A stretch of 64,000 nt of DNA, from contig CM106585.1 of NCBI GenBank assembly GCA_048013815.1, positions 12,524,001-12,588,000 of the forward strand, given 5' to 3'. A model generated the notes under the pieces. That model was given only the letters and a program-made list of their open reading frames with translations, was not told the origin of the DNA and ran no database searches. This document shows, piece by piece, positions 19,152 to 48,818 of the stretch. The stretch's first letter is position 1; the number at the start of each line of letters is the position of its first letter. The translations under genes and the position numbers were made by a program. This DNA comes from Setoptus koraiensis (lineage: Eukaryota > Animalia > Arthropoda).

Positions 19152-20972
19152 CTAGTTCAGTCGATTTAATATAAAAGTGCTGAAACTCTTGCTTTCCAAT
19201 AACACTTCGAGTTTTGTCTTCTTGTCTAGGCCTACTCTAAAGGGAACTGGGTGCTGATTGGCGTTTATAACCACTTGAACTATATAGTTATCCGGTGTGA
19301 GGAAAGCTGTTTCATGCAAGTCAAACATATTCGGCGCGGATAGTAATTTTGATTTCAATCTTATAGAACCTGGGGCTATGTACCGACTGAAGTGTCCGAT
19401 AGCATAGAACATGGGATTCCGATAAAATGTACCGTTTTGTTCGTCTACCAAAATAGCACAATCAGCTAAATTCGAGAAATCATAGTTGGAGAAACGAATG
19501 ATAATTCATGTCATTGCAAAGATCTGTATGATGGTCCTCATCGAGCATGCAGTGATGTCATTTTATTCACCTGGATAATGATTGGCGTAACTTGGTCCTC
19601 CCCACAAGTCAAATGCCATGTTGAAATCGACCCAGCCTACTGACCCATATTGAAGGTTCTGCGTAATGTTATATAGACCAAAAATGTTGAATTCAGACAG
19701 ATTGGTTTATTTTTGGAGAATAAAGTTTGAATTCTTTTGGTTTGTTGTTATTGAGTTTAGTCTTACTTTAGTGATTTCGATTGCATAGTCTTGCGCATAT
19801 CGCCAGTTCCCCAATTTTATGTGATCATTGTGCATTTTTGATTGACTAGCCAATAGCATCTTGTCGGGATATCGCTTGGTTAAATAAATAAGATTGTCGT
19901 AAGGGGCAGGCTGTTCATTTTTATAGGCAATTCCAGCAATCATGTTGGCGGAGGTTTGATTTTTGAAAAGAATATCCGCCCAATGCGGGATGAACTTCCG
20001 CTGATCGTCCAGTGCCAACAGTTTGACATTGTCCTTCAACATGGGACCCAAATAACCAACCACAAAATCTCTAACTTCTTCTGGCGTCATTGTCATTGAA
20101 CTAGGCTGAGTTTCGTTGTTCGCTGTACTTTTAGGCGGCGTCATTGAATTCTCGCCAAGAACCAATGACCAAATGTTCAAGCCTGCCTGCTTGTATGCCA
20201 ATAGAAAATTGTTCAAGTATTCGGCATAACTTTTCATACTATCCTCATTCAATTTACCTCCCCTCAGATCTGAATTTGTCTTGAATTTGACCGGCGCTGT
20301 TGTAGGACTGGCCAACAACTTCAACCTGTTCCTTGAACGACCGGCAGCCTCTAATGCCTCTAATATGATCGGTATTCTATAGTCGTTGTCATAGATGCTC
20401 AGGTCAACCTGTGAACCTCCTTCCGAGTCTAAAGCATAGTTGACAATTGAATATTCATTAGAGCCTATAGGTATCCGTATCAGATTCAATCTAATGCCTT
20501 CGGAGCTGTCAAAATAATTTTGTATCAGTTTGAGTCGTATGTCACCTGGCAAGTGATCAATATTGATGCAAGATGAATCTGTCAATGTTGAACCAAATCC
20601 AAGAATTCTTTGATATTTTTTATTGGTATCGATGAATGATGTAACATTTGTATGGGACTCTTCATAGTAGAACTCATCCGTATTGATGCCTTGATGATTA
20701 TATATCTTGAATCTGTCACCTTTTTGAGTTGAGACTATCTGTACGACTTTGTTCGGAGTAGTAGGCCATTCTACTAATCCAGCATCTGGAATTCTATCAA
20801 ATATTGATTCACAATTAGTCGCGCTACATTTTGATACAAAACTACCATCTACTATGTCTTGATTACAATCAGAAACCGCTGATTGCACCGTGCGGACGAT
20901 ATACAGTAGCAAGAAAGTTAAAATCATAGATAATACTTGAGGATACCAAACAAAACTTCTCTTCTGGTCCAT
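19152..20972 (-). CDS. GBA1: Glucosylceramidase-family (GH30) protein, 3 exons (20972-19768, 19658-19571, 19465-19152); catalytic Glu residues appear substituted
   Basis: YQRILGFGSTLTDSS, RIPIGSNEYS, LKLLASP, LLALDDQR, GWVDFNMAFDLWGGP, FYRNPMFYAIGHFSRY. N-terminal hydrophobic signal; all introns GT-AG and in phase. Confidence 0.9.
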
Positions 20973-21192
20973 ATATTGAAGGATAGAAGCGAAACGTTGT
21001 TTTATTGTTCATATCTTAAAAAGCTTTAACACTCCATTGGATAGGAAACTTTTATTAGCCTCGTCAAGAAATTGAACACCGTCAGCCATAATTGACTAAA
21101 TCAATTCCGACCGAAGTTAGGAAAAAATGTAATACAAGTTGAAAGACACGAACAAACGCAGATCGGCATGAGTCAACGAAAAATTTTTCGGA

Positions 21193-21903
21193 TCACTCTC
21201 TCTTCTCGTTGTTCATTTTATTTTTTATTAACTTTGTTACTGCAACAGCAAACATGCTAAAGCCGGCCACAGAGTAGACAGTTGCCCTAAGCAAGGCTTC
21301 TCTGGCTAGTGCTGAACCGGCCTCGTACACGGAGGGGGCAACGTTTGATTTCTTGAGTTTATTCAGAGTCTTAGAGAAACCGAATAACATAGAGCCACCA
21401 GCTAGCGTAACGAAGACAAAACTTGTTGCAGCCGAATTAATTGATACAACTTGATTGCCATTAGATGATGTTGAGATGCTTGAGTTACTAGTACCTGTCG
21501 CCTGCGAAGGTGACGGAGGAAGCTCCCACGGAGTATCTTGTTGAATAATGGTCCTACCCCATGGCTCTGTCGAGAATAGATCCTCAAATGGATTGCGTTT
21601 TGGCGAATCACTCTGTTGATTTGTTGACGATTCTGACATATTGTTATTTTGTGGCTGTCGTGATGACGATGTTAAATGGTTAGAATTATCACTATCTCTA
21701 TTGTTGTGATTATTATTGTCTAATAAATTGTGTTCTGGAACGGTGTCGTCCAATGTGGATTCATTATTGGCCTTCTGATGTGACGAGCCACCAGGTTGGT
21801 TGTTAACTGTCATAGTTATGCTTCCTGGCATAGAGTTGTCCGTTGGTTGTGTATTTTTGTCAATATAGTTAGTTGCATCCGTCGGGTTATTGCTGTCGCT
21901 CAT
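21193..21903 (-). CDS. Chimera A: GW182 N-terminus (21903-21425, includes Ago-binding motif I) fused in frame to a TMEM242-like C-terminus (21424-21193)
   Basis: Aa ~16-160 are near-identical to the GW182 ORF at 29519 (last 212 nt identical to 29750-29961). The remainder TLAGGSMLFGFSKTL..KK...EAGSALAREALLRATVYS matches the TMEM242/DUF1358 pattern and the paralogue at 25262. Confidence 0.8.
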   Translation of the reverse strand: MSDSNNPTDATNYIDKNTQPTDNSMPGSITMTVNNQPGGSSHQKANNESTLDDTVPEHNLLDNNNHNNRDSDNSNHLTSSSRQPQNNNMSESSTNQQSDSPKRNPFEDLFSTEPWGRTIIQQDTPWELPPSPSQATGTSNSSISTSSNGNQVVSINSAATSFVFVTLAGGSMLFGFSKTLNKLKKSNVAPSVYEAGSALAREALLRATVYSVAGFSMFAVAVTKLIKNKMNNEKRE

Positions 21904-22497
21904 GATGTTTGCAAAGGTTTACTAATTGAAAAATTATGATTCTGCCTTAATTGTGTTCGCCGTTTGCTAGTTGGTCGAGGCAGATTAATAATAATAATAA
22001 TTGTTATGAATACTATTTGTTAATAATAATATATAATCTGTTTGCCTGTGAGAATGATCACATAGATTCACGCGGAATGGCTGGCATGGCGTGAACACTA
22101 TAGTGCACCACTATAGTATAGGCTCGCTCGCTCGCTCAATCAATGAATTTGAATTGGGCAGCGCTCACAACTAGTTGCTTGTGTGTGACACTGACCAAGT
22201 TATATAATAATTATTTATGTCTCAGTCGTCTCTCTCGCTATTTCTCTCGTTAATGTGCTGCTTACCTTGACCATCAACAACGACTGAAACGACTCACCAG
22301 TAACAGGCTAGCGTTCTTTTCGCGCTCATTCCACTAGAGAAACTCACTGACCACTATGCGCCACTCACAAGGTAACCTAGGGAGTAGATGCACACGACGC
22401 GAGGTGTATGTCTGACAATTGATAATGAGAATATTACAAATATATCATGATGCCCATTGATTGTGGAAATTGATTGGATTGATGTAATCACTTGTAG

Positions 22498-22866
22498 TCA
22501 TTCGAAGTATAAAAGATTTATGATAATCAACAAGAGTATAACATTGATGAGTATTGAAAGAGTCTGGCTTCGTTTCGACGAATGGCAAGTGGCCATCAAC
22601 TCGTGTATCTGGGAGCCACTGTTCAATTGTTGTTGTTTAGACAATGATCGCTTTCTCTTGTTTGTTGTTTGGCCGCAACTGGAAACAGTGGCTAGTTGGG
22701 CGTCTAGTCTGATTTGAGAGGCCAATCTCACACATGTTTGTTGTTTGTCATCATTGGATTGTTGTTGCCAGATAGACTCGAACTCATTGGCCGCCATCTT
22801 TTCTACGTGTCCTGGCACGCGTTGAGCAATTAATAGAAACTTGTCCTCTTGTTCGTGCTCTTCCAT
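22498..22866 (-). CDS. Hypothetical orphan ORF (122 aa)
   Basis: ATG start, KRKR basic patch, hydrophobic C-terminal stretch; no recognised family. Confidence 0.3.
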   Translation of the reverse strand: MEEHEQEDKFLLIAQRVPGHVEKMAANEFESIWQQQSNDDKQQTCVRLASQIRLDAQLATVSSCGQTTNKRKRSLSKQQQLNSGSQIHELMATCHSSKRSQTLSILINVILLLIIINLLYFE

Positions 22867-22903
22867 GTTTTATTGTATGCATATTTTTTAACACTTTTTT
22901 GCC

Positions 22904-23203
22904 ATGGAAAGTGACAACCAACAAAATGACAACTTAAGAATGAACCCATCATCGCCAGCCTCAGTGTCACCAGGTGAACAAATTATTAGGCTACGGGCTC
23001 GTAAAAAGATTATTAGGACATCACCCAGGAAGCATGTAAGTATCAAGGATGAATTTCAACAAATCAAGCAACTTCTACAATCACCTGTAACAACCAAATT
23101 TACTAACTTCATTGGGGACCAAGCTCACGCTCACACGAAGAATGGTGAAACCAAAAGAGACCAACAACAAGAATCTGGGCACGCTACTAAGAACTCCGAC
23201 TAA
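22904..23203 (+). CDS. Hypothetical orphan ORF (99 aa), basic and disordered
   Basis: ATG in good context (GCCATGG), coding-like composition; no recognised family. Confidence 0.35.
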   Translation: MESDNQQNDNLRMNPSSPASVSPGEQIIRLRARKKIIRTSPRKHVSIKDEFQQIKQLLQSPVTTKFTNFIGDQAHAHTKNGETKRDQQQESGHATKNSD

Positions 23204-23250
23204 AATATTACGTCTACGTCGGAACACAAGCATCAGAAGGGTCAAAGAAA

Positions 23251-23616
23251 TCATCTCTTGGAGATAACTTTTTGAATACTAATACTATTAATTTCGAACC
23301 CAACAGAGCCACCAGCACAACTGGAAAGAATTTTTTTCACGTGTTCCTTGACGTCATCGGGTATGTTTGGATTGTTGTCCATAATTTCTGGGTTAGCAGC
23401 GCACGAAACTACCTGCCGAAAGAAGGTTAGTGGATGTTGTTGCATAGCATGACAATCGCCAATGTTTGCTCGAATTACACTCTTGAATGTTTTTTCCGCT
23501 CCGTTCTGGAGCTCTTTCGCCAACTCCACGGCTCTGATGACCAATTGTCCCCGAACAGCATATTCCAGATTGCGAACATTTTGATTGATATTGTCAGGAC
23601 ATAATATTGGTGCCAT
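23251..23616 (-). pseudogene. GPT: Alanine aminotransferase 5' fragment, truncated after GGSVG
   Basis: NINQNVRNLEYAVRGQLVIRA, VIRANIGDCHAMQQHPLTFFRQV, NIPDDVKEHVKKILSSCAGGSVG, then unrelated sequence and a stop. No downstream ALT exons seen. Confidence 0.75.
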
Positions 23617-24425
23617 TTTTGAGGATGAGATTAATTGCACTTGAATTTATACCCGGACTATTTTTTATCTTTCCAAATCTAATTTCCAAATGCAATTTGA
23701 GTTTCTGGGGCAGTCACTGAATAGAATTTGAGATTATGATTAATGTTGAGATTACACTCCAATGAATGTTGCTAAAGACGGATATTAGAATAGAGTCGCA
23801 ATTTTTTAGTTTTCTGCCCACAACAGTCATAATAAATAAGCCCTTAGAAAGGAGAGTTCGAGCTTTTTGTAACATTCACAAGAGAAAAACATTCTACTAA
23901 TGTATTTTAATATTCCTCAAAAAGAGGACAATAAAATCCTCATCATATCAATCTGCAAAGACTACATTGGACCATCAAGACTTCGTGATTCCTACAACTT
24001 TTGTTACAGCATACCAGGTACGTTAGGACGCAACATTACGTCAGAACCACTTACACTTCATAGAAGGCGCGTCGAGTCATTTTCAAAATGTGACGGAGCA
24101 TGACAGCAAACATGTGATATGCTCTCACAAGTTAGTTGTTCTAGAAATTACACCTTTCATGTATGGTTATAATGCATTGTAAGTGTGAATTCATTGCAAT
24201 AAAGAATTTCTCCTAAATATATTCTATCGATCATCTGTGGCCGGCCTAATACAAGTTCTAACTCTTCAGTACAAAGTCCGTACTATGTCATTGGCTTTGC
24301 TTACCAGAAACCATACTAGATTAATTAAATTAGTCGATCTGACCAGACACAACACAAACAACGGATTATATTTGAACAAGTTAAATCATAATAGATTCGT
24401 CTCCTTGAACAACAAATCAAACAAG

Positions 24426-25085
24426 ATGCCGTCGGCTCTACTATTGGTAGCGAATGGAAGCGAGGAGATGGAGGCAGTAATCACGGCCGACGTGCTTCGC
24501 CGAGGAAAAATTCATCTGACAGTAGCAGGTTTGAACTCATCTGATCCAGTTAAGTGTAGTCAGGGCGTGACAATTGTGCCCGATACTTCATTTGATGAGG
24601 CACTAAAACAGGACTATGACGTAGTGATATTGCCAGGTGGATTAGCAGGGTCAGAAGCTTTCTGTGCGGTAAGTAAATGACAAGAAAAAAGAAGATATTC
24701 ATCAAGATTCCTTCGGTTATTGTCTTATGTAGTTTAGCAATATGCTCTCATGTTCCTGTTTGTCAATTAGAGCTCTAAGGTTGGCGATCTACTCAGGAAA
24801 CAAGAAAAGGATGGCAAGTATCTGGCTGCTATCTGCGCAGCACCAACTGCATTCAAAGTGCACGGTATCGGTAAAGGCAAATCCATCACGTCATACCCGT
24901 CGATGGCAGAAAGATTCAGAGGCTCAGACTACAAGTATGTCAGTGATCAGGCAGTAGTTGTCGACGGCAAATTAATAACAAGCCGTGGACCAGGCACGGC
25001 CTTCGCTTTTGGACTCAAACTTGTAGAGCTATTGGAGAGCCCAAACACTTCAGAGGAGATCAAAAAGGCCATGCTGGTACAGTAG
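24426..25085 (+). CDS. PARK7: DJ-1/PARK7, 2 exons (24426-24668, 24771-25085); upstream in-frame ATG at 24285
   Basis: ALLLVANGSEEMEAVITADVLRRG, DYDVVILPGG, nucleophile elbow AAICAAP, ITSRGPGTAFAFGL. Confidence 0.95.
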
Positions 25086-25261
25086 ACCTAGCAATCAATA
25101 TTGGAGGTATGTTTGAACCAGTGCCGACTCTTACGATCTTACCGATCATTAGAGTGAAGGAAAGCATAGCTGGCTCTGTTGATCAATAAAGAGGTATTCA
25201 AAACGAAGTGCCTGAAACGGATGTCTATGGACTAGTCGAGGGGTGCACTTTATTGAAACTA

Positions 25262-25867
25262 TCATCTTTCACTAGAGCTGCCATCTACCGGTTCACTTCG
25301 ACCCGTCAAAAAAAGGTTCTCTAGCATCTTGAGGTCTCTTTCGTTGTTTAGTTTACTTTGAGAATTGAAATTGTCTATTAATTTTTGACCAAATAATTTG
25401 TATGTTGCAAAAGCAAACATGCTAAAGCCGGCCACAGAGTAGACAGTTGCCCTAAGCAAGGCTTTTCTGGCTAGTGCTGAACCGGCCTCATACAAGACAG
25501 CGGCCTCCGAGGGGGGAACATTGGGATCTAGAGATTTCTTGAATTTGTTAACAGTTCTGGAAAAACCAAATAAAATAGAACCGCCAGCTAGCGTGCCAAA
25601 ATATATTATCTTCAAACAACTGGCTGAAACATCTGATATATTGTTATTGTGTGGCTGTTGTGCTGACGATGTTAAATGGTTAGAATTATCACTATCTCTA
25701 TTGTTGTGATTATTATTGTCTAATAAATTTTGTTCTGGAACGGTGGCGTCCAACGTGGATTCATTATTGGCCCTCTGAAGTGACGAGATACCAGGTTGGT
25801 TGTTAACTGTCATAGTTACGCCAGGAAGCCTAGAGTTGTCCGTTGGTTGTGTATTTCTGGTAGGCAT
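25262..25867 (-). CDS. Chimera B: GW182 N-terminal ~78 aa (25867-25633) fused in frame to a TMEM242-like protein (25632-25262)
   Basis: MPTRNTQPTDNS...NNNISD is paralogous to the GW182 start at 29519. It continues FGTLAGGSILFGFSRTVNKFKK...EAGSALARKALLRATVYSVAGFSMFAFATYKLFG, the TMEM242/DUF1358 signature. Confidence 0.82.
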   Translation of the reverse strand: MPTRNTQPTDNSRLPGVTMTVNNQPGISSLQRANNESTLDATVPEQNLLDNNNHNNRDSDNSNHLTSSAQQPHNNNISDVSASCLKIIYFGTLAGGSILFGFSRTVNKFKKSLDPNVPPSEAAVLYEAGSALARKALLRATVYSVAGFSMFAFATYKLFGQKLIDNFNSQSKLNNERDLKMLENLFLTGRSEPVDGSSSER

Positions 25868-25990
25868 ACGTATATTTAAATATATAAATACACAAAAACT
25901 CACTCAATATAGCATGCAGCGAGAGTTCTTTCACTGTGAGTGTTTGTGTCCATTTTTGTCATGTACACATTCTCACACCAGCCTTGGAGG

Positions 25991-26036
25991 TAGGGGGACG
26001 CAGCGCGGTCGCGCTTTTCATCGTTGCGCGCTGCTA
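25991..26036. mobile_element. 46-bp internally deleted MITE relic flanked by a perfect 8-bp TSD (CTTGGAGG)
   Basis: CTTGGAGG[TAGGGGGACGCAGCGCG...CGCGCTGCTA]CTTGGAGG. Same insertion site as the 276-bp element at 28938 in the paralogous arm. Confidence 0.75.
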
Positions 26037-26180
26037 CTTGGAGGTGATGTGAGAAGCGCACTCGGCACTGGTGCGCCGAGTGTGCGCTACGTCCACCCCA
26101 GTTCAGACAATTGAAAGCCCAGACGCACCATACAACATTCTGCATGGTAGAAATGTGATGAGAGACACAACCAGCCTGTA

Positions 26181-26558
26181 TAGGGTGTCTGAAGCTAATA
26201 GTCAAGTTCTCTACTGATTATGCTACGCTGCCTTCCACGGTGCATTTTATGCACACAAACACTGCGCGCTGCTTCCAATGTGCACCGATGTTTTATGGAA
26301 TATCCAACAGAGGCGCTGCTCACATTTTGTTCAACAAACAATTCAGTGCAGCACCACTCTCGCGGACCTTTTGTAAACTAATGTAGGTGCATCAGAAAAA
26401 CCTGTGCTTGTTTAAATCGCACAGTTCGTGCGTTAGCAAGAATTTGAGCGTGTTTCGCGCCACAGTATAACAGAGGCACATAATACCACTTTACACTCTG
26501 TGAACTAACGTGCTGCACATGTGCTTTTGGACCTTGACTATTTGCTCCTGACACCTTA
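26181..26558. mobile_element. ~378-bp TIR element (MITE) present only in the left arm
   Basis: Ends TAGGGTGTCTGAAGC / revcomp TAAGGTGTCAGGAGC (12/15 match). The paralogous empty site reads (revcomp of 28372-28400) CCAGCCTGTA-CCATAATC. Possible TA/TG TSD, so Tc1/mariner-like, but superfamily uncertain. Confidence 0.65.
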
Positions 26559-26717
26559 TGCCATAATCATGTGTGTGCTCTGAAACTGATGCGCCAATGC
26601 AACGCATCGATTTTGTTTTTGTGGCTGGCCTGGCGTGAATACTTCAGTAGATGTCAAAGCTTATTTTAGTTTTTGGCTTAATTCAATCACATTCGCGAAC
26701 ACTTCAATTGTTACAAA

Positions 26718-27056
26718 ATGTCTGACAATATGGACACCCACATTAACCAAGACTCAGGTGTCGAGAACGATCTTGGTGATTTTATTCAACATCTAGAGAA
26801 CTATAACCCAGCCATACCTGATATTGTTGTGCATCATTATTTAAACCTGAAAACAAACGACAAACGAGTAGCCAGACTGATAGCTACAGCTGCTCAGAAA
26901 TTTATAGCCGACATTGTGTCGGACTCTCTTCAGCATTGTAAGCTTAGGGATCAAACAAAGAAGAAGGACAAACGTTACGTGCTTACAAAAGAGGACCTCT
27001 CGGCCGCTTTACAGGATCACGGTATATGCATTAAGAGGCCAGACTATTTTAATTAA
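26718..27056 (+). CDS. TAF10: TFIID subunit TAF10, intronless
   Basis: LGDFIQHLENYNPAIPDIVVHHYL...RVARLIATAAQKFIADIVSDSLQHCK...YVLTKEDLSAALQDHGICIKRPDYF. Confidence 0.94.
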   Translation: MSDNMDTHINQDSGVENDLGDFIQHLENYNPAIPDIVVHHYLNLKTNDKRVARLIATAAQKFIADIVSDSLQHCKLRDQTKKKDKRYVLTKEDLSAALQDHGICIKRPDYFN

Positions 27057-27096
27057 ACCTTAATAAATTTCCATGCAAAACAAAGTTAGTTAGCGA

Positions 27097-27997
27097 TTAT
27101 TCATTCTTAAACTGAGGTGGACGCTTCTCAACGAATGCTGTCATTCCTTCCTTTTGGTCGGCCTACGAACATATACAGAAGATAATATTTAGATTAGGTT
27201 TTACTAGCTGAACTGATGGAACATTTTCAACTTCATAGTCTACATAACTTGTTACTTACTGTTGCGAATGTAGCGTGGAAGAGCCTCTTCTCTGTCTTGA
27301 GACCTTGATTCAATGTCGTCTCATAGGAATAGTTGACTGATTCTTTGCACATGGCAACAATCAATTTAGAATGCGAAGAAATCTTGTTGCCCAATTTGAC
27401 TGCCTCCTCTACTGTTTGCTCTGGAGGGAAAACTTTACTAACTAGTCCCCAAGCCTCGGCTTGCTTGGCGTCGATAGGTGCTCCGCCTAGGCACATTTCC
27501 ATAGCGCGTGACTTACCTATTGCTTTAGTTAGGCGCTGAGTACCACCGGCACCAGGAATAGTTCCAATGGTGATTTCTGGCTGTCCAAATTTGGCATTCT
27601 CACCGGCATAGATAATGTCGCACATCATGGCTAGCTCACATCCACCGCCTAGGGCATAACCATTGACTGCAGCTATGATGGGTTTGGTAGTTCTAGAAAC
27701 TCTATCCCAAGCGGACAGGAAATTTTGTTGAAAATTTTCCCCAAAAGTTTTGTGTTGCATCTCTTTAATGTCTGCACCAGCAGCAAACGCTTTGTGAGAT
27801 CCCGTCAAAACCAAGGCACCGATGTCTGGACTCTTTTCTGCTTCATCAATAACTTGTGACAGTTCGTTCATTAATTGATCGCATAGAGCATTCAAAGCAT
27901 TTTTTCTATTCAATGTGATCAATCCTACGTTTTGTCTGACTTGATAGAGGACTAAAGGTCCGGCTGATGAGTAGGCTCTTTTGAATACTCTAAACAT
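27097..27997 (-). CDS. ECHS1: Mitochondrial enoyl-CoA hydratase, 2 exons (27997-27260, 27162-27097)
   Basis: [55 protein letters not shown]. Last exon [21 protein letters not shown]; [11 protein letters not shown] presequence. Confidence 0.95.
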
Positions 27998-28460
27998 TGT
28001 TATTCGTTCAACTGAATATGATGGCCAAGTTATCCGTGGACAATTTGGAGAGCAATTGGTTAGACAATTTATTAATACTTGAAATACTTGAAATACCTGA
28101 AATGACAAGGAGAGTTTAGAAACCTGTAGCGTGAGATCGATTGAGCAATCGAAAATCAAATCAACAAGAAAAAGAGAAGAAAAACGCAACATTTGTCGAG
28201 ACACCTCAGCTTTAATTGGTGCATTTTTAGGCTGACGCTAACACCCCTCGCGTCTTTTTCTTGAACTACGGCCAAAGGCATCGGCAGATTTCCACACGGT
28301 ACACTATAGTGTTCACGCCAGGCCAGCCACACAAAAAGTTCCATGCGTTGCATTGGCGCATCAGTTACAGAGCAGACACATGATTATGGTACAGGCTGGT
28401 TCGCATTGCTACAACATACAGAATGTTGTATGGTGTGTCCGGGCTTTCAATTGTCTGAGC

Positions 28461-28549
28461 TAAAGTGGACGCACATTATCGCACAAAGCGCACACCGTAT
28501 GATGTGCGCTTTCCGTCGTTGTGCGGCAGTGTGCGCCGCGTCCACTCCA
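28461..28549. mobile_element. Degenerate short MITE/hairpin of the TAGGGTGGACGC family
   Basis: AGTGGACGC...GCGTCCACT termini with internal AAAGCGCAC/GTGCGCTTT palindromic pair; no clear TSD. Confidence 0.5.
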
Positions 28550-28610
28550 CTGTGGACTATAGCAGCCAATCAGAGTTTATAAAGTAGCAAGCTGCAGCAC
28601 GCACACACAG

Positions 28611-28904
28611 TACGGATATCTGTGACGGATATCCGCACCGTTTAGAACGGCTGGCCCAGCCCACATCCGTCCGCGGATGATCCGTGCCCGCGCTGAAACA
28701 CACAAATCCGTCCGTGGATTATCCATGGATATTTTGATATACGTGGATATTTCTCTCGTTAACGGATATTCACGGATTTTCGTGGAATTATGAGATTCTG
28801 CAATCCGTCCACGGATTATCCGAGCCAAATTTTTTTCGAAGCGATCCGCACCGAATCCGTACGGTGCGGATATCCGCGCCCACGGATATCCAATCGCATC
28901 TCCA
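28611..28904. mobile_element. hAT-like MITE (294 bp) with CGGATATCC subterminal repeats and 8-bp TSD ACACACAG
   Basis: ACACACAG at 28603-28610 and 28905-28912. Imperfect ~30-bp inverted ends (GGATATC...CGGATATCCGCACCGT) and many internal ATCCG/CGGAT motifs. Confidence 0.75.
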
Positions 28905-28937
28905 ACACACAGTAAAGCGAAAACCATCACCTCCGAG

Positions 28938-29213
28938 TAGGATGGACGCAGCGCACACTCAGCGCACAGGGCCCTGTGCGCTTTCGTGTGATCTCGGCGC
29001 TTTCGGTGTACGCCGAGATTGGTGAAATTGCCCGTGCGGTCAAAAAGGTGGGCAGGGCCCGCCATGCAGTTTCGATGCATGTGTGAGCTCCCGCACTGGC
29101 TGCGGAGGGCGTGTCTGGCGTACGCCGAAAGCGCACAGATGCCCCGAAAAGCGCCGAGAGCGCACGAAAGCGCACAAGGCCCTGTGCGCTGAGTGTGCGC
29201 TGCGTCCACCCTA
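28938..29213. mobile_element. hAT-like MITE (276 bp) with ~70-bp TIRs and 8-bp TSD CCTCCGAG/CCTCCAAG
   Basis: Left TAGGATGGACGCAGCGCACACTCAGCGCACAGGGCCCTGTGCGCTTTCGTG matches the reverse complement of the right end. TAGGG-type terminus and 8-bp TSD are typical of hAT elements. Confidence 0.85.
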
Positions 29214-29446
29214 CCTCCAAGGCTGGTGTGAGAATGTGTACATGACAAAAATGGACACAAACACTCACAGTGAAAGAACTCTCGCTGCATGCTATATTGA
29301 GTGAGTTTTTGTGTAGAATTTTCTCCTTTTCCTCTCGATTTCCCTCCTAAATAAGCTATCATATCCAGAAACAACAACGATAATCGTATTATTATCATCA
29401 GCAGCACCTATCTTGCTATCTATATCACTTTACATTTAGATATATT

Positions 29447-29515
29447 CTTTATATATATATATATATACATATATACATATTTAAATATATATATATATAT
29501 ATATATTTAAATATA
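29447..29515. repeat. Interrupted (TA)n microsatellite immediately upstream of the GW182 ATG
   Basis: TATATATATATATATACATATATACATATTTAAATATATATATATATATATATTTAAATATA. Confidence 0.85.
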
Positions 29516-29518
29516 CGT

Positions 29519-32500
29519 ATGCCTACCAAAAATACACAACCAATGGACAACTCTATGCAAGGAAGCATAACTATGACAGTTAACAACCAACCTGATAGCT
29601 CGTCACTTCAGACGGCCAATAATGAATCTACATTGGACGCCACAGATCCAGAACAAAATTTATTAGACAATAATAATCACAACAATGGAGATAGTGATAA
29701 TTCTAACCATTTAACATCGTCATCACAACAGCCACAAAATAACAATATATCAGAATCGTCAACAAATCAACAGAGTGATTCGCCAAAACGCAATCCATTT
29801 GAGGATCTATTCTCGACAGAGCCATGGGGTAGGACCATTATTCAACAAGATACTCCGTGGGAGCTTCCTCCGTCACCTTCGCAGGCGACAGGTACTAGTA
29901 ACTCAAGCATCTCAACATCATCTAATGGCAATCAAGTTGTATCAATTAATTCGGCTGCAACCAGTGTTGCCGCTGTGATAGCTTCCAACAATTTAACTTC
30001 TAATGGTTGTGAGGTGTGGAAAAATTCTGGTAATGACAATAACAATCAAAATTTGAACCATCATAATAACCATATGCACCATAATAATAGTTCAAGCTCG
30101 TCCGTTGTTACTTTAGACCCATTGACACGTTTTACTTCTATATTAGACTATGATTTCTCAGCTCAGCAACCACCAAATCATGCCGCCCAAGGTAGACTCA
30201 ATCAACAATCAGCACATCATTTGCATGCATCTATGATACGACAACCCCATGCTCCCAATAACATGGCGAATTTCGCACAAGCACAAATGAAACCTCGCCC
30301 TGCTACCGCATGGAATGGCGCAGCATCTTCGATATTATCCTCAACGACTATCAGTGATGATATAGACCCTAATAAAATGTGGTCAGGCCTACCTGATGGA
30401 GGTGACCAACCACAAAATCACCTTATAGCTTCAGGACACCATCTCAATAATGGTTTAAATTCTGGTAACAACAATCTGCGTCAACCGCAACCTACAAGCA
30501 ACATACCCTCATCTTGGGTTAGGCCAGACAAAACGAATTTGGTCTCAAATGCTGGTTCGATGGGAGTGAATCAGAATACCATGTGGGACAGTACGGGACC
30601 TCACAATAATAAGCAATGGATGAGCTCTAACCCGTCTGGTGGTTGGACAGAGGCTGACAGCCTAGTAGGCAATGCTGCTTCAATGATTGCTGCCATGTCA
30701 GCAGGTATGAACACTAACAATCTAAGACCATCTGGTATGCCAATGCGGCCCACTAACACATTAGTTCAAGGACAAGACTGTGCTTTTGCATCAAATTCCT
30801 GGGCATCAGCTGTGAACAAATCTCCTCCAGCAGGAAACTACGATTCCTCCGGGGGTGGCATCGGTACCTGGTCACCAGTCTCTAGTGGTGGCAATAAACC
30901 TGGATCTAGATGGGACGCAGATGGATCTGAGAACGGAAAAGGTGATATGGGAAGATTTGATGATGGCACGGCTATTTGGGGAAGTCCTGCACAAACTAAA
31001 GTTAGTGGTGTTGATTGGGTCGAGAAAACTGGCGATCCCAATGGTGGTAGTAACGACAAAACCCGCTCGATGGGAAATAGTCACAACACACAAGCATTTC
31101 GTCCCCAGCAACCTTCATCATCTGCTAGTCTACTTATGTCATCTGCTACTAGTCCTTCAAATCAGCAGGTTCGCAGCCAGCAAGTTCTGAAACAACCCTT
31201 AATATCTCAAAATGTAAGTAAATCAATAGTGGAACTGCTCACTCATGTTGAAGTTGAGAATATTCGATCAATTCATTCTAATGACAAACTTTTCTATCTT
31301 GCCTTCTAGTTTGATCAAGTGCATCAACCATCCAATGCCCTATCAAGCCAACCATCAAATCAGCCAAATCGAATTCTCGGATTGTCGTCTAACGTTCCTT
31401 CCACACAGCAATTGAAGCATATGGTTCAACAGATCCAGATCGCGGTCCAAGCTGGACATCTCAATGCTCAGGTAAGTGGATTTTTGTCGCTTTTGAATTT
31501 AACGTGCACAAGTTCCCGAACTAATTTCTTTTATTCTTTCTTTTCACGATCCCTCTCATAGATACTAAATCAGCCTTTAGCACCTATAACATTGCAGCTC
31601 CTGTATCAACTGTTGCAACAAATCAAAGTTTTACACCAGCTGCAATTGCAAGCATCTCAACAGTACAATAAATCCGGCAATCATCCTGCGGCGTCAATAA
31701 ATGTACAAATAACTAAGACCAAACAGACTATACTAAATTTACAAAATCAAATTGCTGCTCAACAGGCAGTATTTTTGAAGCAAACTCAGACACACAACAT
31801 TTCATCGCAACAACCATCGATACCAACCATTGCTGCTGGTGGCGTTGGTGGTATCGGTGGGCCAACCCTACCTCCAGGTATCTCTCAATCAGGTGATAAC
31901 TTCCGGACAAGTACTGCAAGTGATATTCACAATCAAGTTATTATGAATAATGCATCAGGCCTTGACGGTTTTGGTACAAATGGCCTAACAAATAATTTGA
32001 ATAACATGAGCATTGGTGGAGGTGCCATGGCCAACTCGCGCTTCGATCAACCATGGAGAGCACCTGCTACTCAACAGCAAACCATTGCTTCTTCATCATT
32101 CTCTAACAATAATTTAATTAACAATTCAAACAATATGCAAAAATCAATTCTGAATAGTGGTGGAAATGGTGGTAATAACTCTCTAGGCAACTCACCCTTC
32201 GTAAGTGTGCCCCCAAGTAATGAATTTGCACGAGCACCGGGACCAGGATCGTCTATGATGGATAGCAAACCATTCGCCATGGGAAATCGTTCCTCTGCAT
32301 GGTCCGCATTCGGAGCAAGTGAATCAGAGCCTGAATGGCCAAACACAACAACTAGCGGAATCTCTGCAAACAACTCATCTCAGCGTAAGTATTAGAGAAA
32401 AGAATGGACCGTATGTCAACTTTATCTGCGAATATATTATGTTTAAATTTGTTTTGTACTATAACACCTTGATTTTACTTGCTTCTCATCATAGCACCGA

Positions 32501-32658
32501 CGAACGCATTTGACTTAGTCCCCGAATTCGAACCAGGAAAGCCATGGAGAGGCACTATGCTAATGAAAAGCATCGAGGATGATCCAACTATGACACCAGG
32601 GAGCGTGGCTAGATCCTTGGCACCTCAAAGAAAAACGATATGGTCCGATGAATTATGA
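29519..32658 (+). CDS. TNRC6: GW182/TNRC6 (Gawky), 4 exons (29519-31213, 31310-31471, 31562-32384, 32495-32658); ends just after PAM2
   Basis: Motif I (STEPWGRTIIQQDTPWELPPSP), scattered GW/W motifs, motif II (FDDGTAIWG), Q-rich region (MVQQIQIAVQAGHLNAQILNQPLAPITLQLLYQLLQQI), PAM2 block (VPEFEPGKPWRG...SIEDDPTMTPGSVARS). Splice phases are consistent. Confidence 0.9.
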
Positions 32659-33389
32659 ATGATGGATTATGAATTACCATAAATGCGATTTTTACTACTA
32701 TTTGATACACATATGGGATGCCTGATACTATAACAAATCTGATTTTCGGTTAGATTGTTAAATGTGCATGACCAATCATTCTACCCGATTGTCTCGTCTG
32801 TGAAGTTTGTATCATTGTTTGCACCAGTCAAGGTCTACTAATCCCGTGATAGGATACATGGAATTCCATGTCTTCCATTCGTCGTTTTCGTCGTCAACAG
32901 AATTATTGTCGTCGAAATGCGCCGTTCTGTCAGTCATGGCATTCTACTTAACACCATTGCACTATTCATATGACTAATTCATTCGACTTGCATTCAAGAA
33001 CCACTCAGTAATATAAAGAATATGATTTTACCTCCTTCAGATCAATAGAAAATATAAGCTCACCTAATAATATACCTCTCAAACTGCAGTGCAACACTTG
33101 TGTGCATATTCTCTTCTCTCTCACTATTGTTGTCACTCACTTGGGTGCGCCCAAATCATAGTCATGTCTCAAATTGTTAGAATTACAACTTTCACGAAGT
33201 TCTGCAATTAAATGTTACAAACCTGGTTAGTTTTGTGCCCAGTAAGGAACTGCGCAGTCTAGTGATGATCTGTCCCATCTATGTTGCAAATCTTAAGGAG
33301 AATGATTTTCCAACTTTAAATCATAATTCAATCAATTTTATTAACACTTATTTTACAACTCATTGTCTAGTACTAAAATAAAGAACTTA

Positions 33390-47915: not shown

Positions 47916-48416
47916 TCAAGCAGTCAGAATTTTATCCAAAACTTTGCCCATAGAGTCCATGTTTTGTTGAGGAAAACTTTTAAATTTGACATCATTCTTG
48001 CTAATTGAGATCAACGATTCTTTTAATCCTCGAACATCACAAGACATCAGATATTTGTCTTCACTTAATTGATGGGCTAGCTCGAGTTGATGGTTATCCA
48101 TGAGATCCTCGTTCGTCACAACCAGTAATTTTTTTCCTTTCCGCAATACCTCCAAACAGGTCCCAGCACCAGCGTGACCTACTACTAGATCTGCTTTTTC
48201 AATATCCTCATCTAGGGAATGTTTATACTGATATACCTCAGTTTTAATGCCTCGCAATCTTGGAAGAGATTTCAAGAGTTTAGTGGAACTGCCGCCTTGT
48301 ATTATGAGAGTTGTGTAATTCAGATCTTTCAATGTTTCTAATAAATCAGCATCTAAAATTGCAGCAACCAACTTATCGAATTTCGTCGTACCTACGGTGA
48401 CAAATATGGTTTTCAT
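47916..48416 (-). CDS. ALG13: UDP-GlcNAc transferase subunit ALG13 (short glycosyltransferase-only form), intronless
   Basis: MKTIFVTVGTTKFDKLV, ADLVVGHAGAGTCLEVL, LMDNHQLELA. Confidence 0.93.
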   Translation of the reverse strand: MKTIFVTVGTTKFDKLVAAILDADLLETLKDLNYTTLIIQGGSSTKLLKSLPRLRGIKTEVYQYKHSLDEDIEKADLVVGHAGAGTCLEVLRKGKKLLVVTNEDLMDNHQLELAHQLSEDKYLMSCDVRGLKESLISISKNDVKFKSFPQQNMDSMGKVLDKILTA

Positions 48417-48818
48417 TCTGAAATACAGTGAGAAGGCCTGGATTGCAAAAAATTTTATCCTAAAAATACTGGATGTGACCTCACTTTTTTCATACTGTCT
48501 GTGAACACGCACAGTATACCCGCTCGTCCGCCGCCTGCCCAGATGAACAACTTTTCGTCTCTGTATGGCATGATACAGGTTTCGCACAGCATTCAGATGG
48601 CATGCACCAACTGACCAAATTACCCAAAAATGCGAACCTGAGATTGGGTCTAGAGATGGTTCACCATTCAGCCAACATGGCAAACTACTTGAAGATAATC
48701 AAGCGGTAAGCGAAGAATCTGAGAATAAAGGCCAAGGTGATTAAGGAAATGAGGCAAGAGCGGTTTTTAAATTTAGTATCGAGTCTTACAACACGATCAT
48801 TTTATGTTAATTAGTAAA

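What the first reader, a model, noticed from the sequence alone, without database searches (positions are those of the whole stretch)
25262..25867. Second GW182-TMEM242 chimera with a different in-frame junction; possibly the working TMEM242 gene under a captured GW182 promoter
Seen: a 201-aa ORF with only the first ~78 aa of GW182 (no motif I), joined at ...ATATCAG|ATGTTTC (25633/25632) to a longer TMEM242-like region than chimera A. A carries more GW182 and less TMEM242; B the reverse. A also has several in-frame deletions relative to B (KKSLDPNVPPSEAAVLYEAGS vs KKSNVAPSVYEAGS). Both junctions and these deletions preserve the frame, and no unfused TMEM242 is present in the window. Inference: repeated frame preservation suggests selection for translation. 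TMEM242's native N-terminus is short and disordered, so B could be a functional TMEM242 with a swapped leader and promoter.
Basis: partly seen in the sequence, partly recalled or inferred. Interest (0 to 1): 0.78.

Follow-up and report, generated by a model that had tools for sequence, protein, structure and literature searches.

The report
GW182-headed TMEM242 gene in a mite
A small mite gene joins a complete, well-conserved copy of the mitochondrial assembly factor TMEM242 to a borrowed, disordered front end copied from the nearby GW182 gene; this is an ordinary kind of gene birth, and neither its expression nor its uniqueness in the genome could be checked.

Summary
The minus-strand ORF 25265-25867 (201 aa) joins the first 79 codons of the neighbouring GW182-family gene (29519+; 92% DNA identity) to a DUF1358/TMEM242 body (Pfam E 1e-10).

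The body is complete. It starts about where unfused relatives start, keeps every invariant or near-invariant family column, and keeps the C-terminal DLxxLxxLF motif. An AATAAA follows the stop. It shows purifying selection against chimera A (omega about 0.25, p=0.004). Chimera A has lost conserved residues and the tail.

The head is predicted to be disordered, has no tryptophan, and evolves neutrally (omega about 1). Its open frame alone is not evidence of selection (P=0.43 by simulation).

More than the ORF was copied. About 750 nt upstream of B is collinear with the GC-rich block upstream of GW182, and the two copies form a large inverted repeat around TAF10 and ECHS1. "Promoter capture" is therefore plausible but unproven.

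Relatives carry unfused TMEM242 1.4-5.5 kb from ALG13, and ALG13 lies 22 kb from B here, so the locus is probably the native one.

Scan notes list similar inverted 5'-cassette chimeras elsewhere in this genome.

Verdict: a real, probably functional chimeric gene and a new member of a known kind. Moderate interest.

The parts
25265..25867 (-). Chimera B coding sequence, 201 codons (stop codon at 25262-25264)
   Evidence: The only in-frame ATGs before TM1 are codons 1 and 19.
25632..25890 (-). GW182-derived head: 23 nt upstream of the ATG plus codons 1-79. Predicted disordered, no tryptophan.
   Evidence: Inverted repeat with 29496-29754, 92%. AF2 pLDDT below 52 for residues 1-77. Omega 0.87 against GW182.
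25630..25632 (-). Junction. An out-of-frame ATG straddles the breakpoint and may be a remnant of the native TMEM242 start (inference).
   Evidence: The conserved lysine K86 lies 7 codons downstream, against residue 9-14 in unfused relatives.
25265..25630 (-). TMEM242 (DUF1358) body: a two-helix hairpin plus a conserved C-terminal tail (RDLKMLENLF, aa 177-186)
   Evidence: Pfam E 1e-10. 56 homologues, best 58% identity. All invariant columns kept. Helices 78-111 and 121-190 at pLDDT 76-89.
25249..25254 (-). AATAAA polyadenylation-type signal, starting 8 nt after the stop codon
   Evidence: Read directly from the sequence.
25889..26643 (-). GC-rich upstream block, collinear with the block upstream of GW182 (possibly transposon-derived). 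It is directly 5' of B and separates B from the divergently oriented TAF10.
   Evidence: blastn segments at 90, 84, 84 and 99% identity, in the same order as 28308-29315. 25889-25995 is 100% identical to 29209-29315.
28298..29315 (+). Matching GC-rich block upstream of the resident GW182 gene (presumed source)
29316..29495 (+). AT- and (TA)n-rich spacer, present only upstream of GW182 and absent from B
29519..31309 (+). First long ORF of the resident GW182-family gene. Codons 1-79 equal B's head; codons 4-147 equal A's head.
   Evidence: M_domain in the following ORF 31592-32395.
21193..21903 (-). Chimera A: the paralogous GW182-TMEM242 fusion with a degenerate body (K86 to S, K135 to E, Y to T, tail lost)
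47916..48683 (-). ALG13 (Glyco_tran_28_C) homologue, a marker of the ancestral TMEM242 neighbourhood
   Evidence: tblastn 48% identity to the ALG13 that lies 1.4-5.5 kb from TMEM242 in relatives L001 and L005.

Best explanation
B is a real chimeric protein-coding gene. An inverted local copy of the GW182 gene's 5' cassette replaced the promoter-proximal region and start codon of a resident single-exon TMEM242 gene. The cassette comprises a GC-rich upstream block of about 1 kb, the start codon and the first 79 codons, and the break falls almost exactly at the native TMEM242 N-terminus. The product is predicted to be a normal TMEM242 two-helix hairpin with its conserved matrix-side tail, carrying a 79-residue disordered, tryptophan-free leader with no GW182 activity. 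Translation of the body now depends on the borrowed ATG. The body is kept by purifying selection while the leader drifts. B is the best candidate for this mite's working TMEM242, the inner-membrane factor that helps assemble the ATP synthase c-ring. A is an older, degenerating or diverging paralogue. The three head copies and parts of the two bodies are repeatedly patched by non-allelic gene conversion. Shown: the anatomy, homology, conservation, selection signature and collinearity. Inferred: the direction of copying, expression, mitochondrial import and sole-copy status.
For: - ORF and junction.
- DUF1358 match above the gathering score.
- 56 homologues, best 58% identity. Most of the close relatives are unfused, with 8-13 residues before the conserved lysine, and single-ORF genes.
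- B keeps all invariant and near-invariant columns and the C-terminal DLxxLxxLF motif, while A does not.
- A-B body: dN 0.083, dS 0.34, omega 0.25, with omega<1 at p=0.004. All A/B indels are multiples of three.
- After the recent homogenisation of block 2 (1 synonymous difference in 23 sites), the non-synonymous changes at conserved columns lie on A, not B.
- AF2: head disordered, body two long helices at pLDDT 76-89.
- AATAAA 8 nt after the stop.
- The upstream ~750 nt is collinear with GW182's upstream block.
- ALG13 lies next to TMEM242 in two relatives and 22 kb from B here.
- N-terminally FLAG-tagged human TMEM242 is still mitochondrial, with its N- and C-termini in the matrix: PMC8020751.
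Against:
- The genome outside the window could not be searched, so an unfused TMEM242 elsewhere is not excluded.
- The omega estimate is pairwise with A and partly reflects history before the fusion.
- The head is net acidic (-4), and a leader of that kind might hinder import into the matrix.
- The head's open frame is expected by chance in 43% of simulations.
- The 180-nt spacer next to the GW182 ATG is missing in B, so transfer of a working promoter is unproven.
- The TM1 block of A and B is far more diverged (9 of 15.7 synonymous sites) than the heads (dS 0.05-0.11), so a simple 'one fusion, then duplication' history does not fit without extra gene conversion.
Confidence: 0.6

Rival explanations
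1. B is a redundant duplicate. An unfused native TMEM242 elsewhere in the genome (for example beside RPB2, STEEP1 or Peptidase_C97, as in relatives) does the work, and B is silent, weakly expressed or slowly decaying.
For: In relatives TMEM242 sits between STEEP1 or Arfaptin and RPB2 or Peptidase_C97. None of those genes is in this window. There are no expression data. The head evolves neutrally.
Against: B keeps every conserved column and the conserved tail. Omega is below 1 and the indels are in frame. ALG13, the other ancestral neighbour, is only 22 kb away, which argues that the A/B cluster descends from the native locus. The scan's notes mention no other TMEM242 in this genome, which is weak evidence.
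Confidence: 0.25
2. The head is not part of the mature protein. Transcription or splicing bypasses it, for example through an upstream exon joined to the TTTCAG acceptor-like site 9 nt after the junction, or a transcription start downstream of the first ATG so that Met19 is used. The 'chimera' would then be only an ORF-level appearance.
For: TTTCAG lies just after the junction, and GTATG overlaps the head's ATG. A TATA-like run sits only 8-22 nt before the ATG. This genome does have short GT...AG introns, as in DJ-1.
Against: There is no in-frame ATG between codon 19 and TM1, and no upstream coding exon is evident. The upstream sequence is the GC-rich block. Relatives' genes are single ORFs. 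The head has no indel in 237 nt relative to GW182.
Confidence: 0.1
3. The direction is reversed. The upstream block plus the 79-codon head belonged to TMEM242, and the GW182 paralogue captured them.
For: The head lies N-terminal to the motif-I-like region of GW182 (codons ~100-120). It is low-complexity and cannot be traced to GW182 relatives. One relative (P0005) has a 67-residue S/N/Q-rich N-terminal extension.
Against: The B junction coincides with the native N-terminus of unfused relatives. P0005's extension shows no significant similarity beyond the body. A's 100%-identical tract, codons 79-146, shows that GW182-to-TMEM242 transfer does occur at this locus.
Confidence: 0.12
4. Assembly artefact: the chimeric contig arose from a mis-join in repeated sequence.
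For: A 107-nt stretch (25889-25995) is 100% identical to 29209-29315.
Against: The head differs from GW182 at 21 of 237 positions, including a 10-nt micro-inversion. The junction lies inside unique, diverged sequence. Two different chimeras exist, with diverged bodies.
Confidence: 0.02

Closest known systems
TMEM242 / DUF1358 (PF07096), the mitochondrial inner-membrane assembly factor for the ATP synthase c-ring (Carroll et al. 2021, PMC8020751)
   Same: Residues 80-201 of B are a full-length family member. They have the lysine before TM1, two long helices, the ALARKAL core and the C-terminal DLxxLxxLF tail, with 58% identity to the nearest unfused relative.
   Different: The native start and the first few residues are replaced by a 79-residue foreign, disordered, net-acidic leader. 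The native promoter region is replaced by sequence copied from upstream of GW182.
GW182 / TNRC6 / Gawky family
   Same: The first 79 residues and 23 nt of leader are 92% identical in DNA to the resident GW182-family gene, and the upstream block is shared.
   Different: B has no tryptophan or GW motif, no motif I, and no M domain, PAM2 or RRM. B cannot be expected to bind Argonaute and is not a functional GW182.
Chimeric genes born by partial duplication with 5' exon or promoter capture (from my own knowledge: Drosophila jingwei, Sdic, and the tandem-duplication chimeras surveyed by Rogers and Hartl)
   Same: A partial copy of one gene's 5' end, with its upstream region, fused in frame to the body of a neighbouring gene. 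The result is young and lineage-specific, with the donor gene left intact.
   Different: The recipient appears to be the resident and possibly the only conserved copy of a housekeeping mitochondrial factor, not a spare duplicate. The copy is a local inverted repeat around two intervening genes. The locus shows repeated gene conversion among three head copies.
Other inverted 5'-cassette chimeras noted by this scan in the same genome (LMBRD1-PPCS, PABP cassette, Dorsal-ETS)
   Same: As described in those notes: an inverted partial copy of a neighbouring gene's front end, fused in frame to the next gene, which has lost its own start.
   Different: These are AI notes that I did not check. Whether they share a mechanism or a boundary element with this locus is unknown.

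Membership tests
TMEM242 / DUF1358 (PF07096) | Significant match to the family profile above the curated cut-off | tested here: met
   E 1e-10, 42 bits against a cut-off of 23.4. Residues 87-170 match profile positions 22-107 of 115. phmmer found 56 homologues.
TMEM242 / DUF1358 (PF07096) | Conserved residues of the family (lysine before TM1, GF in TM1, LARKAL, R, Y, G in TM2) | tested here: met
   B has K86, F90, G101, F102, L132, A133, K135, A136, L137, R139, Y143 and G147. These are all the invariant or near-invariant columns of the 16-sequence alignment.
TMEM242 / DUF1358 (PF07096) | Two transmembrane helices forming a hairpin, with a membrane-extrinsic C-terminal region | tested here: met
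   AF2 gives helices 78-111 and 121-190 at pLDDT 76-89, with a short loop at 112-120. This is a prediction only.
TMEM242 / DUF1358 (PF07096) | Mitochondrial inner-membrane location and a role in c-ring assembly | not testable with these tools
   Known for the human protein (PMC8020751). There are no localisation or functional data for the mite protein.
GW182 / TNRC6 | Tryptophan-containing (GW/WG) Argonaute-binding motifs | tested here: not met
   B contains no tryptophan. The homology with GW182 ends at codon 79, before the first W motif at about codon 103.
GW182 / TNRC6 | Silencing-domain elements (M domain, PAM2, RRM) | tested here: not met
   Pfam finds only DUF1358 in B.
Chimeric gene by partial duplication (5' cassette capture) | Donor gene still intact, with the copied segment diverged and collinear with the donor, including non-coding upstream sequence | tested here: met
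   blastn shows collinear segments 26643-25632 against 28308-29754 at 84-99% identity. The GW182 ORF is intact.
Chimeric gene by partial duplication (5' cassette capture) | Fusion transcript and protein actually made | not testable with these tools

The most novel reading that the evidence does not exclude
B is the only working TMEM242 of this mite. On this reading an essential mitochondrial assembly factor now depends wholly on a start codon, leader and regulatory block taken from a microRNA-pathway gene. It would also be one instance of a genome-wide process in this very compact genome, in which local inverted copies of 5' cassettes (upstream block plus first codons) repeatedly overwrite the front ends of neighbouring genes. 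The shared outer boundary of the copied block (28298-28308) in both A and B would mark the element or hotspot that drives the process.
Probability: 0.3. Interest if true: 0.65.

Novelty: new member of a known kind. Interest (0 to 1): 0.42.

Why it matters
If B is expressed and is the sole TMEM242, it is a natural experiment in two respects. First, it would show that this inner-membrane assembly factor tolerates a long, acidic, disordered N-terminal extension that must cross into the matrix. Second, it would show that a housekeeping gene can survive wholesale replacement of its promoter and start codon. The locus also has two chimeras with different junctions and clear gene-conversion mosaics. 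Together with other chimeras the scan noted in this genome, it offers a tractable case for studying how local inverted duplications and ectopic conversion create and reshape genes in an extremely streamlined arthropod genome. If an unfused copy exists or B is silent, it is just one more young chimeric duplicate.

Tried and rejected
- The search for homologous proteins returned nothing, both with whole B and with residues 80-201. The exhaustive HMMER search then found 56 relatives, so the two blanks reflect a limit of the word index, not absence of relatives.
- Exact look-up of five window proteins found none in the collection. The species is therefore not in the protein database, and no conspecific or congeneric contigs could be fetched.
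- Searching scan notes for the ancestral neighbours (RPB2, STEEP1, arfaptin, DeSI) and for the upstream block by sequence gave nothing.
- Rfam and tRNA scans of 20000-33000 were empty, so the GC-rich block is not a known RNA gene.
- I first read the upstream block as independent transposon insertions and concluded that only 23 nt of GW182 upstream sequence was shared. I rejected this after blastn showed the whole block is collinear with GW182's in all three copies.
- The idea that the head's open frame shows selection was rejected by simulation (P=0.43).
- The idea that P0005's long N-terminus is homologous to the head was not supported.
- The bacterial-type promoter and terminator scan is irrelevant for a eukaryote.
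- A's own first 15 codons (MSDSNNPTDATNYID) loosely resemble native TMEM242 N-termini. At the DNA level there is no support for this, and they may be nothing more than an upstream in-frame extension. Left open.

Full report
**The observation**

The minus strand carries an ORF from the ATG at 25867 to the stop at 25262-25264, encoding 201 aa. Repeat finding, MAFFT and blastn agree on its front end. The stretch 25632-25890 is an inverted copy, 92% identical over 259 nt with no gaps, of 29496-29754. That is the 23 nt before the start codon plus codons 1-79 of the large plus-strand ORF at 29519.

The large ORF is rich in W-containing motifs. The next ORF downstream (31592-32395) hits the Pfam GW182 M domain at E 9e-13, so the donor is a GW182-family gene.

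Residues 87-170 of B hit Pfam DUF1358, the TMEM242 family, at E 1e-10, above the curated cut-off.

Chimera A (21193-21903) carries GW182 codons 4-147 and a weaker DUF1358 match. tblastn and tblastx with relatives' proteins find no third TMEM242 in the window.

**What the body of B is**

An exhaustive HMMER search with residues 80-201 found 56 homologues. The best is 58% identical.

Most of the close relatives are short proteins, mostly 96-138 aa, in which the conserved lysine before the first helix sits at residue 9-14. The loci fetched for the closest ones show single-ORF genes. In B that lysine (K86) lies 7 residues after the junction. The break therefore falls essentially at the native N-terminus, and B retains the whole TMEM242 protein.

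In a 16-sequence alignment B keeps every invariant and near-invariant column. It also keeps the C-terminal DLxxLxxLF motif seen in the closest relatives. A has lost K86, K135, the tyrosine before the LFG motif, and the whole tail.

AlphaFold2 predicts residues 1-77 as disordered (pLDDT below 52). It predicts residues 78-111 and 121-190 as two long helices at pLDDT 76-89. An AATAAA starts 8 nt after the stop.

**Selection**

Nei-Gojobori counts for the A-B body core give 12 synonymous differences in 44.2 sites and 10 non-synonymous differences in 126.8 sites. That is dS 0.34, dN 0.083 and omega 0.25. Omega = 1 is rejected at p = 0.004. All A/B indels are multiples of three.

The signal is a mosaic:

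| Block | Synonymous differences / sites | Non-synonymous differences |
|---|---|---|
| TM1 | 9 / 15.7 | 4 |
| From YEAGS to TM2 | 1 / 23.3 | 4 |

The two blocks differ at p = 0.009. The non-synonymous changes at conserved columns in the second block lie on A. So the two TMEM242 copies are old, both were constrained for a long time, part of the body was recently homogenised, and since then B has stayed conservative while A drifts.

The heads behave differently. Omega is 0.9-1.5 and dS is 0.05-0.11 for all three pairs. In a simulation, 43% of heads given 21 random substitutions stayed free of stops. The head's open frame is therefore no evidence of selection by itself. The frame matters only because the body has no in-frame ATG of its own: the only in-frame ATGs before TM1 are codons 1 and 19.

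**What was copied, and from where**

More than the ORF is shared. Upstream of B, 25889-26643 is collinear with the GC-rich block 28308-29315 upstream of GW182. There are four segments in the same order, at 90, 84, 84 and 99% identity. An AT-rich spacer (29316-29495) is present only at GW182.

A short piece of the outer end of the same block (22078-22109) also lies upstream of A. All three copies of the outer end stop within about 10 nt of one another (28298-28308). The block may be transposon-derived, but I could not show this. Rfam and tRNA scans were empty.

The two large copies face each other around TAF10 (26718-27056) and ECHS1 (27233-28204). The locus is therefore a large inverted repeat with a 1.66-kb spacer. 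That is the footprint expected of a local inverted duplication, for example by template switching. It overwrote the intergenic region between TMEM242 and TAF10, and the TMEM242 start.

An ATG straddles the junction (25632-25630) and is out of frame by one base. It may be the remnant of the native start, but that is inference only.

I favour the direction GW182 to TMEM242 for three reasons:
- The junction coincides with the native TMEM242 N-terminus.
- Most relatives lack any head.
- A's codons 79-146 are 100% identical to GW182: 0 differences in 205 nt against 14 in the preceding 225 nt, p = 1e-4. This shows recent GW182-to-TMEM242 conversion at this locus.

That identical tract begins where B's homology ends. 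This fits a B-type original junction that was later over-run in A, but other histories are possible. The old TM1 divergence against the young heads means either two captures or continuing homogenisation of the heads.

**Is this the native locus?**

In two relatives TMEM242 lies 1.4-5.5 kb from ALG13, with STEEP1 between them and RPB2 or Peptidase_C97 on the other side. A third relative has Peptidase_C97 adjacent.

The window has an ALG13 homologue at 47916-48683, 22 kb from B, but no STEEP1, RPB2 or Peptidase_C97. Being this close to one ancestral neighbour is unlikely by chance. It suggests that the A/B cluster descends from the native gene, which lowers but does not remove the chance of an unfused copy elsewhere.

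**Function**

Human TMEM242 is an inner-membrane protein with both termini in the matrix. It helps assemble the ATP synthase c-ring, and an N-terminally FLAG-tagged version still localised to mitochondria (PMC8020751). An N-terminal add-on is therefore not obviously fatal.

B's head has no tryptophan, so no Argonaute binding is expected. Its first 35 residues are net +2, against -1 in GW182, but the whole head is net -4. I draw no conclusion from this.

My best reading, at about 0.6, is that B is an expressed, functional TMEM242 with a passenger leader and a replaced 5' regulatory region. The main rivals are:
- an unfused copy elsewhere, with B redundant or silent (0.25);
- the head bypassed by splicing or by a downstream transcription start (0.1);
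- the reverse direction of capture (0.12);
- an assembly artefact (0.02).

**Limits**

- The species' proteins are not in the exact-match collection, so no same-species or sister-species DNA could be fetched.

**Context and novelty**

Scan notes, which are AI notes that I did not check, describe this as an eriophyoid-type mite. They list several other chimeras made from inverted partial copies of neighbouring genes' front ends. They also list a follow-up on chimera A that reached a similar 'front-end swap plus recent conversion' reading.

Chimeric genes born by partial duplication are a known kind, and this one is a new member. The unusual points are these:
- The recipient looks like the resident, conserved copy of a housekeeping mitochondrial factor.
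- Two chimeras with different junctions coexist.
- The process may be recurrent in this genome.

I score interest at 0.42.

Noticed in passing
window 28298-29315, 25889-26643, 22078-22109: A GC-rich block with internal inverted repeats (28937-29003 against 29148-29214) lies upstream of all three GW182-head copies. Its outer end stops within about 10 nt in each copy. It could be a transposon or a duplication hotspot. Its 3' 107 nt are 100% identical between B and GW182, although the neighbouring head is only 92% identical.
   Followed up: partly
window 25817-25831 (B codons 13-17): B differs from GW182 by what looks like a 10-nt micro-inversion. GCTTCCTGGC in B is the reverse complement, 9 of 10 bases, of GCAAGGAAGC in GW182. 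It turns MQGSI into RLPGV.
   Followed up: partly
window 21417-21632 against 29754-29969: A's GW182 codons 79-146 are 100% identical to the resident gene, while the preceding 225 nt differ at 14 sites. The very recent conversion tract starts where B's GW182 homology ends.
   Followed up: yes
window 21859-21903: A has its own start and 15 codons (MSDSNNPTDATNYID) that are not from GW182. They loosely resemble native TMEM242 N-termini of relatives, but they may be only an upstream in-frame extension.
   Followed up: partly
window 21632-21859 and 25632-25859: The head copies of A and B are exactly 4000 nt apart, while the bodies are 4165-4186 nt apart. No other sequence between them is duplicated, so this is not a simple 4-kb tandem repeat.
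   Followed up: partly
L001 85-10130; L005 74-5665: In two related mites the order ALG13 - STEEP1 - (...) - TMEM242 - RPB2 is conserved. In the window only ALG13 (47916-48683) remains near TMEM242, so the block has been broken up in this lineage.
   Followed up: partly
L006 157-492: A 768-nt metagenome contig encodes a TMEM242 homologue whose N- and C-terminal halves match in two separate tblastx pieces. The called protein (P0014) starts only at the second half, so the gene may have a frameshift, a sequencing error or an intron there.
   Followed up: no
window 29440-29518: A long (TA)n microsatellite with a repeated ATATTTAAATATA motif lies directly before the GW182 ATG. Only the last 23 nt of it are shared with B.
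   Followed up: no
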